64,000 bases of DNA. It comes from Ascidiella aspersa. Its lineage: Eukaryota. The number at the start of each line of letters is the position of its first letter. The stretch's first letter is position 1. A program made the position numbers and the translations under genes. The notes beneath the pieces are model-generated. The model searched no databases, was not told the DNA's origin, and was given only the letters and a program-made list of their open reading frames with translations. The stretch is taken from contig OZ004611.1 of assembly GCA_963924565.1 (NCBI GenBank), forward strand, positions 19,964,001 to 20,028,000, written 5' to 3'. Positions 26,501 to 34,376 of the stretch are shown piece by piece.

Positions 26501-28477
26501 GAGTTTGGTTGGCGATTAGAAAAGGTTGGCAACCCCGGATTTAAAGTCTTTATGGTAATGACATAACCTGGTGAAATAATGTCCTATAGTGAATGTATGT
26601 TAGACAACCTAAAATGTGACTGACAGCTTATCGAAACGAAAGTGAAGACAATATTATGTTAGATAACGATTAATATAATAACTTACTGTAAAGGAAGATA
26701 AGTGGAGCGATATGAAATAATAGTGAGCCCAAGGGGGCACTAGTGTAAAAAAGGTTGGGAAACACTGACTTATACTTATTATCAGATTATCCACAAGTTT
26801 GTAAAGTAAACATTTGAAATAACCTTGGGCCCTTGGAAAACATTTGCTATATTGGATTTTAGTTATTTCCGGAATCACATTTGATTTTCATGCTAGATAC
26901 CTATATAAACCAGACAAGAGCTGTTGAAAATTAATATCGACTGTGTGTTTCGATATTACTATGGACATGCTCTCAGCTTTAGGTATTTACATTTTAGGCT
27001 TTTAATACTTTTACGCCTTACACCAGTGGTTCTCAACTAGGATGCCGCGGCACCATCGGGTGCCATTTCTAATCCTCAAGGGTGCCGCGACATATTTGGG
27101 AATCTCAAAGAATCCGATTTTTTTAACTCTTACAACCTTTTTTGTAAGATGAGAGTGTAATAAATCCAAGTATTATTTTCTACGTTGTGTAGAGCTGATT
27201 TGTGCTGTTCCACTTCCGTTTATTGTGACATTCTGGTGAATTACCTACAGAAAATCTTATAAGGGAGCCCCAATCTATTTATTATTTCTGATTGGTGCCG
27301 CTATCCATTAAAGGCTGAGAACCACTGCTTCACACCAATATTACTGTTGCATTTAGGCTGTGCTGGCGATTTTCGGCAGGTTCATCCCATTGCTGATTTG
27401 GTTTGTGACGTTTTTCTTTGGCTTCTCGATCGCAACGTTCTACTCGAGTGGTATGCTTTTACTATTTCTCCTCACTTCTGTAGTTCTTAAAAATCGGTAT
27501 ACACACAACTTGCTTTAGACATTTCTAAAACTAACTTGAACCTAAGCGCCTGTTTCTTGTGCACCTACATTTGCCAGGCATAATTCGAGCGCCAAAAAGA
27601 TTGTGAACATAGTTTATTAAATTTGTCAACCACACCATATACAATACATGTGCTGGATGGTTTGGCCTTCTTCTGTTCGTGATTACCTATGTTATCGTCA
27701 TATTACGTAACCTTCAAAAATTTGGAAATAAATTGTCTAATCCGGGTTGAATAAAGAGAGTTGTTAAGCCTAGTTAATAATTGTTTCAAGCTATCACTGT
27801 CATGTTTTTCAGGTATATCCTACAGTTCAAAGGTTACCAACGTGTCTGCAGCCTACATTTACATATTCGCGGTTGGAAACACCCTAGGTGGAATGACAAT
27901 GTCACCTCTGGCTGGCGTTATATTTGACGAGGACCCGTTTGCGGTGGTCAGTCCCATTTAACATAGATAATTTTGGCGCTAACGATTAACTGTCGTTCTC
28001 AAAAACTACAGAAAAATGATATCAAAAACCGCAAACTTGTGCCGAATTGAACTGTTAAATGACTAGCGAAAATTAATCTTTAATATTATTAATTAGAAGG
28101 ATATGGACTAAGTAAAATACGTGACTTTAGAAAAATAAATAGATTTATTACTTTTTAGGATCGTAGCAACTAAGTTGTCGGTTTGCAGCATTACAATTAC
28201 TGAGTAAAAAATATGTTATTTAAAAAAACTCAACTTTAACAGGTTTCAACGATTATTGAGTTTTTTTGGTGATTCGATTTAACTAAATTAACACAAAGGA
28301 ATAAAAAATAATGCTTTTGCTGTTTAACAGGTTTATCTGTTGTGCGGTTTGGCTGTCTTCAATGTTATTTGTTTTCTGTGGATGTATAAGATGGGCGAAC
28401 GCCACCTTGTCAAATTGACAGGTAGAAAACAAAGTGTTATGGAGCAAGACAACCAAGCCTTTTCAACCGAAATGTAG
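20575..28477 (+). CDS. MFS transporter, MFSD4/NaGLT1 (sodium-dependent glucose transporter 1)-like, 483 aa
   Basis: Nine phase-consistent exons: 20575-20694, 21656-21833, 22080-22196, 22547-22654, 23874-24289, 25155-25292, 27357-27450, 27813-27946, 28331-28477 (1452 nt, ATG to TAG). Motifs GPTLLYLA, VFTGRSAG, IWGEKNSRPYMQAYHFAFSVGALLAP, FWVGFGLGR. Confidence 0.9.
22736..23521. mobile_element. hAT-type non-autonomous element in MFS intron 4
   Basis: TIRs catgggcgcccgca / tgcgggcgcccctg; TSD GTCGAGGT at 22728-22735 and 23522-23529. Confidence 0.88.
24331..24600 (+). mobile_element. Penelope-like terminal-repeat relic with degenerate hammerhead core
   Basis: Inverted repeats 24331-24377 / 24489-24534; attaa-CTGAAGA-t-gatac-aacccc-gtata-AAAA-CGTC-ttaa. 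Same family as 44812-45011. Confidence 0.65.
25950..26538. mobile_element. hAT MITE
   Basis: TIRs caggggtcgccaacct / aggttggcaaccccgg; TSD ATTTAAAT/ATTTAAAG. Confidence 0.8.
27024..27327. mobile_element. hAT MITE, related to 18833-19104 and ~46200-46463
   Basis: TIRs cagtggttctca / tgagaaccactg; degenerate 8-bp TSD ccttacac/cttcacac; gggtgccgc motifs. Confidence 0.8.
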
Positions 28478-28885
28478 TTGAAATGATATATGTTCTGTTC
28501 TTTAAAATCAAAACGTGTAATCAAATGGCAATTCCGTTCGTTTAAAGTATTTGGGTTAGTCCAGAAGGACTTTTTGACGTTGAACGTCGCTTATCAACAA
28601 CTGAGAAATGTTAAGCACTGATCATTGTAATAAAATGAAAATGGCTAATCGATAATAAAACAACAACAACGATAGCTTTGCTTGTGGCATAAATCGGCAC
28701 CTCAGCAACCGACAGACCTTTGAATACAACTCTCCGGAATGACGTTAAAATTAAAATCATGTGCCGATAAATTCGTAGTTTTTAGAAATTTACTTTCTTG
28801 TGTCAATGTTTGATATAGGGTGGTACTATACAGGCAGTTGAAATTTAACAAAACAAGCAATCTCCCTTAACACACAACAAACTAT

Positions 28886-28950
28886 ATGAAAATGCCTCAA
28901 ATTATTATGAAAATGTCTCAAAATTATTATGAAAATGTCTCAAAATTATT
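28886..28950. repeat. Minisatellite, 21 bp x3
   Basis: tatgaaaatgYctcaaattat repeated three times. Confidence 0.9.
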
Positions 28951-29980
28951 AATTTGTAATGAAAAGTGCTTATTTGAGCCTAAAATGCTTGCATGCCTAT
29001 TAGTTATGAAATACTCTTTTTTCTGAAATTGCAAAAAGTTTCGAGGCACACTTGACAATCTTTCATGACACACTAGTGTGCCGCGGCACGCACACAGTTT
29101 CGGTGTCACTGACCTACACACACGAAAATATTTAATTTATAAATTTTGTAGAATTTTGATTTGTTATCAAAATAATAGGTTTTGGCATGAGGTAAGCGAA
29201 ACCAGTCAGTTGCCACTTGTGCGCCAATTATGTCGCAAACGTGTAACGAACGCGTTTTGCACTCGAACGTTGTGACATGAAAGTTCGTCCCCGTTTTGCG
29301 ACATGAAGGGCCAGAAACCCTACGCGAAAGCCATTCAGGAAAGTATCTTTTGTAACAGTTGCCGAACTAGGAGGAGAAACTGACCCCGTTACTAAATAGA
29401 CCCATGTATTGGGTTTCACCTCAGCACCGTTTTGCATGACAACGAGGACTTGCGTACGCTTGATTGACACACAAGGCGGGTGTTTTTTTTTCCGACGGAT
29501 CGCTAACACGTCATATTTTCCACAGATTGTTTCGTAAAAAGATGTCCAGCTTCGTGTATATGACGTTACGTCACAGCTGCGGAGTATATAACAGGTGTAT
29601 GTGTGGGGCACAAGATGACAAAACTATATAGAGACTCTTTTTGTCGAAAAACATTCTTGTATCGTTTGCGCACGGTATAAAAAAGTAAAAAGTATTTTTG
29701 AAATTTCTTAGAGAAATCTGTTGCCTAAAAGTAGAGCATCAATTTATTTTTTTACTCAAAATGCAATACAATAAATAATGGACAGGACAGTTGTTTAAAT
29801 TCAATATTTGTTATTTACCAAATATGGTGACGTATAACGAAATTGAAAAAGAGTTTAATATTTTATTATTCTATTAGCAGCCTGGACTTGATTCTGTTGA
29901 ATAAACCTGACATTATATAATTGTCCCGTTAGACTGCCTCTGAAATTCGTTCAAGTCAATTCAAACTTATCGGCACAAAA

Positions 29981-32479
29981 ATGAAGCCGCATGGGCGCGC
30001 AACGATCATGATAGTTCTCGTGTTATGCGTGACCTCACACTTGGTGACGTCATCCTGTCCGTGCCGTCGCAAGCGTCGCGACTGCTCGCGGCACCGCTAC
30101 CGACGCGCCTTCGACAGCTGCGCATCTTGCGAAAAGTTTGTTCAGAGGTACGGACTAAACCCGGTATTGGTGCCGCGATCGAAAGGAAGTTCACTCGAAA
30201 ACTGGACGAGGCATTATTGTCGGGGCAGGTGAGGTTATAGTGTTTGACTGCATCTTTGACAGATACCGATAAACCAGTGTCTTTAACACCATTGTTGTAA
30301 ACAGGTCATTTTGAAATGAAATAAGTCCCAAGTCAAGTTTGGATCATAATGGTTGGAGGTTTTAGTAAGACGTAATAAGTATATCAAAGCCCATACAGAA
30401 GTAGTAGCATTCTGATCGTTTCGAATAAGTCTTTATTCATTTTCAACATCAAAGTCAAAGTATTTTGCAAAGTCCCAGTCAAGTCATTTTGGGAGAAGGT
30501 CAATTTAAGTTAAGTCATTGACATAAAAAAGAAACTAATAAAATTGGTCGTCATTTTATGAGCAATAAATCCAAACAAAATTAAAAACGCTATATACAGC
30601 AAGCGAATTGTTTTACTTGCAAAAATTAATACAAATAACCCAATTTTATTAAGATATATTTAATGAACACACTTAATCTTAACCCAATTTATTTGACAAA
30701 ATAACAAGGGGCGGGTGTTTCCTAAATAAATGGTATACTTAAATTTACAAACAAATTCCCGCGTTCTTTATTCTGGATTGTTGTTTTGTTAAGCTGAATG
30801 TGCAATGGGTCCCTTGCTTTTAATAGTGATTTTCATTAGCGATTTTTCTAATGTAAAACCTTATTTCGCCTGAATTTGAACAACACGTTTATAGCACCGC
30901 CTAAAACAAAAAATTACAGCTGGTAATATCAGCAAGGCGCCGCTTCAGCAAATTCTTTATTCTAGACTTGGGGTAAAATATATGGTTAACATTCTTACCT
31001 CACTTTTTCACAATGACCAAGCTATAGTCGCGTAAAGGTGAAGATTACGCACCGCTGCTCTTCTATCAAATGTAATATATTAATACAAAACGTTTTCGTC
31101 GAAATGCAGTTGCGAAGTAAATGCTACGAAAGTATTTCCACAGCAATCGGACTACATGATTAAGCCAAACTTTGCGTCTAAATATAATTTGAATCGCCCT
31201 ACAGCAAACCTGTAACAACCTAAATAAGTCGTAACAAACAATTGGAAAATTTCTTATCTTGTTCGGCAGTGTTTCCGCTAAGGTGCGCAACTGGAGAAAC
31301 ATCCCAATAATATTCGCACTTGGAAAATCAGATTTCTATTAGGGTTTAGCAATAAACCTGAACGAAGTGCATAAAATCAAATAAGGGGTCCGTGAACTAG
31401 TTTTAGGGGGGTCATGAAGGTCTAATTAGTGTATATTTAAGAAGTAATCTTTGGAGCATAATGGTTGGAGGTTGTAGTAAGACGTAATAAGAATATCAAA
31501 GCCCATACAGAAGTAGGTATCATTTTGGACGTTTTCGATAACTCTTTATTCATTTTCAACATCTTAAGAGTTATTCGAAACGTCCAAAATGATACCTACT
31601 TCTGTATGGGCTTTGATATTCTTATTACGTCTTAAGAAGTAATCGATTTTTAAAAAAAGAGTTTAATTGAAAATAAAGCGGTTTTGCACTAATGGGTTTA
31701 GACTTTATTTTACTTTTACATTTTCGGCCTGAAATCAGCAGATTTCTTAAGTTTATTGTATTGTGACGTCAATTTATTACGTAATCTTTGAAATATTTTT
31801 TGCCTAACGTGGTCCACGCGCAGAAAAAAAATAATGGGTCGACGGTAAAAAAAGAACCACTGCACTAACTTAACCTTTTTTCCTAACATAACGATTAAAA
31901 AGTTGCGAACCATGAACGGCTGGAAAATATCACAATCTTGAAATGAAAAAAATACTTTCATTGGCGAAAAAACAGGTCCAACTTTTCCACAAAATTGTTC
32001 TGTTGAGCCTAAACGTTTCTTTCCGCATCGTTCTAATTTATTTCTACCTTCTGGCAAATGAAGCTGAGGTGATGGTATGTACAATACTGTATCAGAACCA
32101 AAACGGTCCGGTTGGTGTACTATAACATGCATGACATGAGTACGATGGACCAACATTATTTATAAACTTATAAATCAACCATGGTAGAACCCCCTCTATG
32201 GTTGACTTAATAAGTTATTCTTTTGGTTCACAAAAACAATCAAAAAGTTGTGTGACTTTTTCATTTTCTTTTTATCTCAGCGACCCAACGTTCGTTTCGG
32301 AGCTGACGTCTTGTCAGAGTTGCTCGGCCGGACTCTTTCCTTACAGCGCTGGCGTACTCTACTCCCGCTACATACGAACTCCCCACTACGTATGCCATCC
32401 GTGTGGTGCAGCGTGGTACCCGGTGCTGAAAACAAGAAGGGTTGGCTGCGAATGCAGTTTCGTTACATTCGTGAAATAG
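29981..32479 (+). CDS. Secreted cysteine-rich protein, 148 aa; putative divergent IL-17/cystine-knot cytokine
   Basis: Exons 29981-30228 (AG|GTGAGG donor, phase 2) and 32281-32479 (pyrimidine tract plus CAG) join in frame. Both are GC-rich islands in AT-rich DNA. Signal peptide, RRKRR and RYRR sites, terminal VGCEC. The gene itself is well supported; the family assignment is tentative. Confidence 0.8.
31437..31644. repeat. Near-perfect 69-bp-arm hairpin insertion flanked by 13-bp direct repeats (Penelope-like relic)
   Basis: Arms 31478-31546 and 31566-31634; TTAAGAAGTAATC at 31437-31449 and 31632-31644. A single-arm copy lies at about 30341-30450. Confidence 0.85.
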
Positions 32480-34376
32480 AATTAGGCACCCAAGATGTTT
32501 TTCCCTATTAACCGACCTGCTTGATTTTGTGCTTTGGTTGCCTTTCTCCCCTTTAACTAATTCAATTTTCAGTTTGTTTAGAATTTACTTTGATTTTTTT
32601 TTCAATTTAAAAATGGTATATTTAAATGGTGACTGACGTTTAGCGATAATTTTGCCAACTAATAAAGTTCTAAACCATTAAAAGTTTCAACAAATTTCAA
32701 TGGAACCCATGTCACTTTTTTACCTGTCTTAATTTGTATAAGTATCTAAATTTACACAAATAGCTCTGATATTAATTTGTTTTCTTTTCTAGTTTCCGAA
32801 GCGGGTCATTTATTTACTGTTACATCACAGCTTATACCAGGTTGATCCACGATTTACCGATTAACTGAGTCGCAATACTATTGACGTATTTATCGCAGAC
32901 CACACACAAATGACAAACACCCTTACCGATCGTTATTTAAGAATTGTAATTTTCTTAACTTTTGAATTTTTTTCTGAATATAGGTGTGAAGTGATTTTTC
33001 AGGGCTTTACTAAATTAAATAATCTTCCTCAAACCGCAACTGAATATGTCGGGCCTCGAGTTGGAGGACCCCGTATAGTGTAACGCTTAGCTGATGTTGC
33101 ATGAAACATGTCTATATGCGTTTTTATGTACTGTAGCTTATTGATCGTTTGTTCTTCACGCTAACTATTCAATTGAAATCAACATTTTTTTTTATTATCG
33201 TCGGACATTTATTTGCCATTGTTAATTATAACACGAAAATAAATGCAAATCAGAAATGAAAAGCACCAGCTGGAAAAAAAGTGTTTCCACCATTATAAAG
33301 TAATACATTCCATTTTGTTTGGTTTATTATGAAAAGTATATACAGACCAAAAATAGGTTTAAATACCACATTTATTTTACTGTATAGTTATTGTTCTTCC
33401 AATTGATCATTTTAACTTCCTTTATACGCGCCACCTATTTTTTTTAGTTTTACATCGTTAGGTTTATACGACACCGAATTGCTTGCAAATGATAAAGATT
33501 GTTGTTAAACTCCTATAGCCGCTGACTTTATTCTGCGTTTATAAAAGACCCAACACTTTACTATAACATTGAAATCCGTTCCATTCTAAAATTGTTGATT
33601 ACTATAACATTGAAAATTACCATCCATTTGACAGCGTAAGTTGGCACAATATAATGAAATAAACATACGTGTATGAAAATCAACAATTTTAGACTTGGAA
33701 TGTACAGCTGCGTTTATGTATAAATCCCATGGGACAGTGCGTATATGCATTTCAGATATAGGTACAGAGATAGAAACTCTTATGCTACTGACTAAGATGA
33801 TCATAGTTATATCATAATTATACCATTGGGATTAATTTTACCATGTGAACCGATCAACAATAAAAAACATTTCGCTGAGGTTGGGCAGATGGTTCATTTT
33901 AAATCATTTTATCAAAGCACAGATTTTATTGTACGAGTCCTTATATAAGCCTAAAAAAAATTGCAATGCATACGTTAATGTAATTAATTGACCAAAACCA
34001 ACTTGAAATTAAACAAAAAGTTAACGTCAAGTAAACAAAAATGAAATATATAAGAGGTTATTGCGGGGACCACTATACGAGTTGTTCTAATGACTGATAG
34101 CGGTCCACGGCCTGGATTGTGGAGCCCATTGTGTTATGACATTTAACCTTATTATTAAAAGAACATGCGGCGGTTGATAAAGCAAAGCATATGAGGCTTG
34201 CAATATAACAAAAATAGTTTGTGCACGACAGGTTATTTAACAAAGGCACTGCGTATGTGATGCTGTTATACAAAAACAAGGCTAAAAAAATCAATGCAAC
34301 TTTGGGCACTTTTCCACGTACTAATTGTTAAAATGAAATCATGTGTAGCGCGGTTGCTCGTGTCTACCACCACGCT

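What the first reader, a model, noticed from the sequence alone, without database searches (positions are those of the whole stretch)
29981..32479. Orphan two-exon secreted pro-protein with an IL-17/cystine-knot-like signature, split across two short ORFs in the ORF track
Seen: splicing 30228 to 32281 gives MKPHGRATIMIVLVLCVTSHLVTS-SCPCRRKRRDCSRHRYRR-AFDSCASCEKFVQRYGLNPVLVPRSKGSSLENWTRHYCRGSDPTFVSELTSCQSCSAGLFPYSAGVLYSRYIRTPHYVCHPCGAAWYPVLKTRRVGCECSFVTFVK. This has a signal peptide, two convertase sites and 12 Cys after the signal. Known: IL-17s have RSLSPW...DPNRYP..I.EA.C...C...V.VGCTC. Inference: SSLENW, SDPTFVSEL, CQSC and RVGCEC follow that layout in order, so this may be a very divergent IL-17/Trunk/PTTH/noggin-fold ligand with extra CxxC pairs and a Cys-containing basic propeptide.
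Basis: partly seen in the sequence, partly recalled or inferred. Interest (0 to 1): 0.8.

Follow-up and report, generated by a model that had tools for sequence, protein, structure and literature searches.

The report
Orphan sea-squirt secreted cysteine-rich gene
This is a real, transcribed and spliced two-exon gene for a small secreted cysteine-rich pro-protein with no detectable relatives. It shares some layout with the interleukin-17 genes of the same genome, but every profile and fold test for that family failed.

Summary
Exon 1 (29981-30228) and exon 2 (32281-32479) join through a canonical GT..AG phase-2 intron. A 618-nt contig from an RNA-like public run lies on 29882-30225 and then 32278-32551, which is that junction. 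Stranded RNA reads cover both exons at low depth on the + strand.

The product is 148 aa. It has a signal peptide, an 18-aa polybasic segment with two furin-type sites, and 12 cysteines after the signal. It is single-copy in its genome. The word searches for both exons and an exhaustive search for exon 2 found no real relative.

The IL-17 reading is not demonstrated:
- Pfam IL17, an iterated profile of about 16 IL-17 genes from this genome, and hhalign never reach the locus.
- The family's invariant C-x4-C is C-x2-C here.
- The 'SSLENW' region is not significant.
- AlphaFold models were low-confidence even with IL-17 rows as the alignment.

A residual parallel remains. The intron has the same phase and nearly the same position as in this genome's IL-17 genes. 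The last exon has the same length, and 'VGCxC' sits at the same place (end-to-end alignment z about 3.7, mostly from cysteine spacing).

The parts
29882..29980 (+). 5' UTR (minimum extent)
   Evidence: The spliced X3 contig starts at 29882. The stretch has no ATG, an in-frame stop lies at 29930-29932, and A is at -3 of the ATG.
29981..30228 (+). Coding exon 1 (codons 1-82 plus 2 nt of codon 83)
   Evidence: GC is 57% against 32% in the flank. RNA depth is about 1 in X4 and 6-8 in X3. Other individuals carry the variants P3S, I9V, one synonymous change and S67A, with no frameshift.
29981..30052 (+). Predicted signal peptide (residues 1-24, MKPHGRATIMIVLVLCVTSHLVTS)
   Evidence: Basic n-region, then a hydrophobic core with 9-residue Kyte-Doolittle means up to 3.7, then V-T-S before the proposed cut. 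No SignalP run was available; this is inferred from the sequence.
30053..30106 (+). Polybasic Cys-containing segment (residues 25-42, SCPCRRKRRDCSRHRYRR) with two furin-type sites
   Evidence: Net charge +8, 3 Cys, pI 11.5. RRKRR and RYRR fit R-x-[KR]-R. Cleavage itself is inferred, not shown.
30229..32280 (+). Intron, 2052 nt, GT..AG, phase 2
   Evidence: the X3 contig skips it, and X3 and X4 have zero depth in its unique parts.
31442..31640 (.). High-copy foldback (MITE-like) repeat inside the intron; a half copy lies at 30330-30450
   Evidence: 69-nt arms, 96% complementary. Word depth is 4-8e5 against about 90 for single-copy sequence in DNA runs.
32281..32479 (+). Coding exon 2 (last nt of codon 83, codons 84-148, stop TAG 32477-32479)
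   Evidence: GC is 54%. The X3 contig part shows 0 differences. It has 6 Cys arranged CxxC...CxxC...CxC.
32480..32680 (+). 3' UTR (shown to at least 32551), with AATAAA at 32661 and ATTAAA at 32677
   Evidence: The X3 contig reaches 32551. Poly(A) signals are.

Best explanation
This is a real, lowly expressed, single-copy gene of a probable sea squirt. It encodes a lineage-restricted secreted protein that cannot be placed in any described family.

Shown: the gene is transcribed from the + strand and spliced once (GT..AG, phase 2), giving a 148-codon reading frame.

Inferred from the sequence:
- The first 24 residues direct the protein into the ER.
- The next 18 residues are a polybasic, 3-Cys pro-segment. 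Furin-type convertases would cut it after RRKRR33 and/or RYRR42.
- The released C-terminal domain would be about 106 residues, net charge about +6, with 9 Cys. It would fold into a disulfide-stabilised beta-rich module.
- The odd Cys count would allow one interchain bond, giving a covalent dimer.

I take the domain to act outside the cell as a signalling ligand (cytokine or growth-factor-like) rather than as a bulk effector. Its evolutionary source is open. Descent from the IL-17 family is possible but undemonstrated.
For: - Splice sites and frame.
- Spliced 618-nt contig in X3 and strand-specific reads in X4.
- Sharp GC step confined to the two coding exons, with AT-rich UTRs.
- Complete ORF with an upstream in-frame stop and no upstream ATG.
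- Hydrophobic leader and charge/Cys distribution.
- ORF intact (no indels) in contigs of three other runs.
- No paralogue in the genome.
- No word-search relative for either exon.
- No true relative of exon 2 among 1.84e9 representatives.
- No Pfam or PDB sequence match.
- Low RNA depth and a roughly 106-aa mature size fit a ligand better than a bulk defence peptide (inference).
Against: - No orthologue was found, so purifying selection could not be measured.
- Exon 1 carries three amino-acid polymorphisms against one synonymous change, which shows no clear constraint.
- Signal-peptide cleavage, convertase processing, disulfide pattern, dimerisation and any receptor are all inferred.
- The fold is unknown (pLDDT 44-52).
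- The joined protein was neither searched nor folded.
- No eukaryotic genome other than this one could be searched.
Confidence: 0.5

Rival explanations
1. It is an extremely diverged member of the IL-17 family, derived from one of this genome's many IL-17 genes. It would keep the family's last-exon architecture, but with a shortened first Cys pair (C-x2-C) and extra CxxC pairs. It would act as a dimeric cytokine through SEFIR-domain IL-17 receptors.
For: - This genome's IL-17 genes have a phase-2 intron just before R-x-P, 10-12 residues before the first Cys of a 65-67-aa last exon. That exon ends [VI]GC[TQH]C plus 5-6 residues (17 in the L019 subgroup). The gene here has a phase-2 intron before S-D-P, 11 residues before the first Cys, in a 66-aa last exon ending VGCEC plus 7 residues.
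- End-to-end alignment of exon 2 to four own IL-17 last exons gives z 3.6-3.9 (1-2 of 3000 shuffles). Against seven family members z is 4.2 (0 of 2000). The maximum z for 252 real control windows, 133 of them Cys-rich, was 2.15.
- With Cys fixed, z against seven members is still 2.6 (12 of 2000).
- Paralogue L007 has RRYRR followed by a Cys, like RYRR...C here.
- IL-17 coding exons are also GC-rich.
- Eight SEFIR hits show the pathway is present.
- The literature states that many IL-17s are too divergent for standard searches (PMC11087794) and that the family shows low sequence conservation (PMC4517768).
Against: - No PF06083 match at E<=10.
- The own-genome IL-17 HMM scores exon 2 at 3.5 bits, and 70 of 2000 shuffles do as well.
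- hhalign gives probability 2.4-2.6% over 11 columns only.
- Two rounds of profile iteration recover about 16 loci, including very divergent ones, but never this one.
- The same profile hits human IL-17F/A at E 4e-10, so true members are easy to recognise.
- The invariant C-x4-C is not met.
- W-to-P spacing is 10 against 12-13. The exon-1 tail gives z 1.05-1.36, while true members give 3.2-6.9.
- With Cys fixed, z against the four core members is only 1.85-1.94, while the weakest accepted members give 3.2-5.5.
- AlphaFold with IL-17 rows still gives pLDDT 52, and Foldseek's best hit is E 6.6.
Confidence: 0.25
2. It is a precursor of a defence effector (antimicrobial or toxin-like). The cationic, disulfide-rich product or the polybasic N-terminal peptides would act directly on microbes rather than on a receptor.
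For: - The 25-42 segment has net charge +8, and each later part has +3.
- It has dibasic processing sites.
- Exon 1 is highly polymorphic.
- Other agents of this scan noted several orphan cationic Cys-rich secreted peptide genes in the same genome. These are leads only and were not tested here.
Against: - A mature domain of about 106 aa with only moderate charge is large for an antimicrobial peptide.
- RNA depth is very low in both RNA data sets.
- It is single-copy, not in a tandem family.
- It resembles no known antimicrobial or toxin family.
Confidence: 0.15
3. It is a transcribed but functionless or very young reading frame, for example a decaying duplicate or a de novo ORF. The protein features would then be fortuitous.
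For: - No orthologues or paralogues were found.
- Expression is low.
- Exon 1 has three non-synonymous changes against one synonymous change.
- Codon usage is unlike that of the neighbouring GPCR genes.
Against: - At this exon composition, a 148-codon frame that stays open across a splice has a chance probability of about 0.3% per frame (my estimate).
- The GC rise coincides exactly with the coding parts.
- It has a proper signal peptide, an even 12-Cys complement and canonical splice signals.
- The frame is intact in all four sampled data sets.
- Exon 2 shows no difference in the RNA contig, although intron diversity is 1-2%.
Confidence: 0.07

Closest known systems
IL-17 family (Pfam PF06083), specifically the chordate 'T2' type present in about 16 copies in this genome
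   Same: Small secreted protein with a pro-region. A phase-2 intron lies just before an x-x-P motif, 10-12 residues upstream of the first Cys of the last exon. The last exon is about 66 aa. 'VGCxC' is followed by 5-7 residues and the stop. First Cys to CxC is 45 residues, as in paralogue L007.
   Different: No profile match of any kind. It has C-x2-C instead of the invariant C-x4-C. An extra CHPC pair is present. 'SSLENW' replaces 'RSLSPW', with W-to-P spacing of 10 rather than 12-13. It has two coding exons instead of three or more. No IL-17 fold was recovered by AlphaFold and Foldseek.
Canonical growth-factor cystine-knot ligands (TGF-beta/PDGF/NGF/noggin/PTTH-Trunk type)
   Same: Secreted, convertase-type pro-protein. 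It has a C-terminal C-x-C near the end of the chain. The odd Cys number after processing is compatible with a covalent dimer.
   Different: No C-x-G-x-C ring motif. No Pfam hit to any such family at E<=10. No PDB sequence match.
Orphan cationic Cys-rich secreted peptide genes noted elsewhere in this genome by other agents of the scan
   Same: Small two-exon genes encoding a signal peptide, dibasic sites and several cysteines, with few or no relatives (leads only).
   Different: Those are described as short six-Cys peptides, partly in families. This one is a 148-aa, 12-Cys, single-copy gene, and the findings index holds no look-alike sequence.

Membership tests
IL-17 (PF06083) | Match to the family profile at or above the curated cut-off (24 bits) | tested here: not met
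   hmmscan of each exon at E<=10 gave no IL17 hit. The six-frame PF06083 scan of the genome found 7 loci over the cut-off and 2 weak ones, none at this locus. The own-genome IL-17 HMM with --max scored exon 2 at 3.5 bits.
IL-17 (PF06083) | Four knot cysteines: C-x4-C on strand 2 and C-x-C on strand 4 | tested here: not met
   C-x-C is present (C139, C141). The first pair is C-x2-C, whereas C-x4-C is invariant in 8 own paralogues and in human IL-17F (alignment). See the alignment.
IL-17 (PF06083) | N-terminal 'RS[LV]SPW' strand, 12-13 residues before the R-x-P proline | tested here: not met
   The sequence here is SSLENW with W-to-P spacing of 10. Exon-tail alignment gives z 1.05 and 1.36 (not significant), while true members give 3.2-6.9.
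IL-17 (PF06083) | Conserved proline of the 'S-V-P' motif at the start of strand 3 | tested here: inconclusive
   Two candidates exist: P35 in RTP or P41 in CHP. Pairwise alignment and MAFFT choose differently.
IL-17 (PF06083) | Two long beta-hairpins tied by the knot disulfides (IL-17 fold) | tested here: inconclusive
   Exon 2 alone gave pLDDT 44. With IL-17 rows as the alignment it gave pLDDT 52, with only one hairpin (37-47 / 52-61). Foldseek against the PDB gave best E 6.6 and no IL-17. The full-length joined protein was not folded.
IL-17 (PF06083) | Gene architecture seen in this genome's members: phase-2 intron before x-x-P, last exon of about 65-67 aa carrying all knot cysteines | tested here: met
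   The phase-2 junction lies 11 residues before the first Cys, against 10-12 in the paralogues (17 in L006). The last exon is 66 aa.
IL-17 (PF06083) | Binding to an IL-17 receptor and signalling through SEFIR/CIKS | not testable with these tools
   Only the presence of 8 SEFIR hits in the genome was shown.
Growth-factor cystine knot (TGF-beta/PDGF/NGF/noggin/PTTH) | Six knot cysteines with a C-x-G-x-C / C-x-C ring, or a profile match | tested here: not met
   No C-x-G-x-C in the sequence. No Pfam family of this kind at E<=10.
Proprotein-convertase substrates | R-x-[KR]-R motif after a signal peptide | tested here: met
   RRKRR (residues 29-33) and RYRR (39-42) are present. Only the motif was tested; cleavage was not.

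The most novel reading that the evidence does not exclude
The gene is a cryptic IL-17-superfamily cytokine that has diverged past every profile method. It keeps the ancestral intron phase and position and the terminal VGCxC, but with a re-wired disulfide framework (C-x2-C plus extra CxxC pairs and a Cys-containing basic pro-segment). If so, ascidian IL-17 repertoires, and perhaps others, contain hidden members with altered knots.
Probability: 0.25. Interest if true: 0.6.

Novelty: new variant of a known kind. Interest (0 to 1): 0.38.

Why it matters
Sea squirts are the closest invertebrate relatives of vertebrates, and their cytokine repertoire is poorly known because ligands evolve fast. An expressed, unannotated, secreted 12-Cys pro-protein with no relatives is a candidate new extracellular signal. 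If it proves to be a hidden IL-17 derivative, intron position and exon architecture could trace cytokines beyond the reach of sequence profiles. As it stands, it is one more orphan secreted cysteine-rich gene with no functional data, so its value is as a lead.

Tried and rejected

2. A word search seeded with an own IL-17 exon, meant to collect an outside IL-17 set, found nothing. The profiles were therefore built from own-genome paralogues only.

3. The only exhaustive-search hit, P0001, is a 618-aa bacterial protein with six 'CNPADTGWNQ...TNTVGCDS' repeats. Its score is summed over the repeats and is not homology.

4. The weak zinc-finger-like hits were rejected as CxxC...CxxC pattern noise in a secreted protein. 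These were zf_Tbcl_Rhp7 at E 0.024 and GATA-1 and astrotactin at E about 0.7.

5. A link to the divergent C7 IL-17-like subgroup, which has a Cys shortly after the W as this gene does, was not significant in local alignments (z -0.6 to 1.25).

6. An internal duplication was suggested by 'SCxSC' and 'HY(V)C' occurring once in each exon. It was not significant (z 0.8).

7. Horizontal origin, suggested by the GC-rich coding sequence, was rejected. The gene has a spliceosomal intron and a eukaryotic signal peptide, has no bacterial or viral relative, and own IL-17 exons are similarly GC-rich.

8. The fold search on the AlphaFold model returned noise only.

Full report
**What is there**

An ATG at 29981 has A at -3. 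It is preceded by an in-frame stop at 29930-29932, and no upstream ATG lies in the transcribed leader. The frame runs to 30228 and is followed by gtgagg. A pyrimidine-rich acceptor (ttttatctcag) ends at 32280, and the frame continues from 32281 to the TAG at 32477-32479. The split codon AG|C encodes Ser83, so the 2052-nt intron is phase 2. The two exons are 57% and 54% GC. The intron is 34% GC and the flanks, including the UTRs, are 31-32%. The compositional step therefore coincides with the coding parts.

**Transcription and splicing**

One call of read laying over 28300-34000 was decisive. Run X3 has zero depth in all unique intronic and intergenic bins but covers the exons of this gene and of the upstream gene, so it behaves as RNA. 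It contains a 618-nt contig lying on 29882-30225 and then directly on 32278-32551. Because 'cag' occurs on both sides, this is the 30228/32281 junction.

The stranded RNA run X4 comes from a different study, and only about 6% of it was read. It covers both exons at about 1x, with first mates only on the - strand. The clearly expressed + strand gene upstream (last exon from 28330) shows the same orientation. The gene is therefore transcribed from the + strand at a low level, and the junction is documented by one assembled contig.

Contigs of X1 and X2 (DNA-like) and X3 carry P3S, I9V, one synonymous change and S67A in exon 1. They carry no indel in either exon. The exon-2 part of the X3 contig shows no difference.

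**The product, read exon by exon**

- Residues 1-24 form a typical leader: a basic n-region, a hydrophobic core with 9-residue hydropathy means up to 3.7, and V-T-S before the proposed cut.
- Residues 25-42 (SCPCRRKRRDCSRHRYRR) have net charge +8 and three Cys. They contain two R-x-[KR]-R sites.
- The rest of exon 1 (40 aa, 3 Cys) and exon 2 (66 aa, 6 Cys: CxxC...CxxC...CxC) are each net +3.

Twelve Cys follow the signal peptide. Nine would remain after cleavage at RYRR42. Cleavage, disulfides and dimerisation are inferences.

Every search and both structure predictions used single exons.

**Relatives**

- The 308.6-Mb genome holds only the locus itself for either exon at E<=10.
- The word searches used the natural open frames around each exon, so that proteins of roughly 50-170 aa were eligible. 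They found nothing, not even the protein itself.
- The exhaustive phmmer search of exon 2 against 1.84 billion representatives returned a single hit. It is a bacterial six-repeat protein whose score is summed over repeats, so it is spurious.
- Pfam and PDB sequence searches gave only CxxC-pattern noise.

'Orphan' therefore stands, with two caveats: exon 1 did not get the exhaustive search, and no other eukaryotic genome could be searched.

**Testing the IL-17 idea: the negatives**

The genome is a good test bed. PF06083 finds seven loci over the cut-off. A profile of their last exons hits human IL-17F/A at E 4e-10. Two rounds of own-genome profile iteration raise the family to about 16 last exons, including subgroups that Pfam misses. 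This locus never appears at E<=10.

- An unfiltered hmmsearch scores exon 2 at 3.5 bits, and 70 of 2000 shuffles reach that.
- hhalign aligns 11 columns around VGCxC at 2.4-2.6% probability.
- Among eight paralogues, the invariant last-exon positions are C-x4-C, one Pro, and C-x-C. This gene has C-x2-C.
- The exon-1 tail with 'SSLENW' is not significantly like the 'RSLSPW' tails. It gives z 1.05-1.36, while true members give 3.2-6.9.
- AlphaFold on exon 2 alone gave pLDDT 44.
- AlphaFold with eight IL-17 exons as alignment rows, a set-up biased towards the hypothesis, gave only pLDDT 52 and one hairpin. Foldseek then found nothing better than E 6.6.

The structural test was low-confidence rather than contrary.

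**Testing the IL-17 idea: what remains in favour**

In this genome's IL-17 genes, the last intron is phase 2 and lies just before R-x-P, 10-12 residues before the first Cys of the last exon (17 in one gene). That exon is 65-67 aa in two subgroups and ends [VI]GCxC plus 5-6 residues. The gene here has a phase-2 intron before S-D-P, its first Cys at +11, a 66-aa last exon, CxC 45 residues after the first Cys (exactly as in L007), and 7 residues to the stop.

| End-to-end alignment of exon 2 | Full shuffle | Cys held fixed |
|---|---|---|
| Against four core paralogues | z 3.6-3.9 (1-2 of 3000) | z 1.85-1.94 |
| Against seven family members | z 4.2 (0 of 2000) | z 2.6 (12 of 2000) |
| Weakest accepted family members (against the four core paralogues) | z 4.1-8.4 | z 3.2-5.5 |

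The maximum z among 252 real control windows, 133 of them Cys-rich LDLa sequence, was 2.15. Most of the signal comes from cysteine spacing. The locus therefore sits just below the weakest real members.

The literature says IL-17s show little sequence conservation and that many escape standard searches (PMC11087794, PMC4517768). It also says tunicates and vertebrates have only the type lacking Cys 1/4 (PMC11087794). I put descent from IL-17 at about one in four.

**Most likely mechanism**

The protein enters the secretory pathway, is oxidised in the ER, and is trimmed by furin-type convertases. It is released as a moderately basic, disulfide-rich domain of about 106 aa, possibly a covalent dimer because the Cys count is odd. 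Low RNA depth, single-copy status and size favour a signalling ligand over a bulk defence peptide. Both remain inferences.

Eight SEFIR hits show that IL-17-type receptors exist in the genome. Nothing links them to this protein.

**Context**

Other agents of this scan call the genome a sea squirt (leads only). A cellulose-synthase profile hit on the same chromosome is consistent with that.

**Verdict**

The gene model and the secretory pro-protein reading are supported. IL-17 membership was tested and not met on its defining features, though an architectural resemblance keeps 'IL-17-derived' alive as a minority hypothesis. This is an orphan secreted cysteine-rich gene of moderate interest.

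Noticed in passing
window 31442-31640 (half copy 30330-30450): A foldback, MITE-like element lies inside the intron. Its 69-nt arms are 96% complementary. Word depth in DNA runs is about 4-8e5 against about 90 for single-copy sequence, so it is a very abundant repeat family in this genome.
   Followed up: partly
G000 C3:22.17-22.25 Mb, C5:17.72/17.73/22.38 Mb, C7:1.36 Mb (loci L003-L023): The genome's IL-17 family is larger than Pfam shows. Iterated own-genome profiles find about 16 last exons. These include a tandem 'SQDDLFIVDTACACLGC' subgroup. They also include a C7 trio that lacks the phase-2 intron and carries an extra Cys 7 residues after the conserved W. One C2 copy has two stops.
   Followed up: partly
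L007/L008/L009, penultimate-exon donor: The triplicated C3 IL-17 genes appear to use a GC-AG intron (AAG|GCAAGT) at the conserved phase-2 position.
   Followed up: no
window 28330-28681: This is the last exon and 3' UTR of an upstream + strand transporter-like gene (stop at 28477). It is well expressed (depth 54 in X4). Reads splice in from about 27950.
   Followed up: partly
window 33173-34000: An X3 (RNA-like) contig of depth about 120 covers this stretch downstream of the gene. A 38-nt skip at 33580-33619 is also present in a DNA run, so it is an indel allele rather than splicing. The transcript is unidentified.
   Followed up: no
G000 C5:19610700-19611167: A cellulose-synthase (PF03552) profile hit of 27.5 bits lies in a 647-aa open frame, about 0.35 Mb from the window. 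This is consistent with a tunicate genome.
   Followed up: no
G000 C4:2.37-2.40 Mb, 4.39-4.42 Mb, 13.86 Mb; C2:13.22 Mb: Eight SEFIR-domain hits (IL-17 receptor or CIKS type) were found, several in a tandem cluster on C4.
   Followed up: no
window 30050-30130 and 32310-32400: 'S-C-x-S-C' and 'H-Y-(V)-C' each occur once in exon 1 and once in exon 2, in the same order. The exon-to-exon alignment is not significant (z 0.8).
   Followed up: yes
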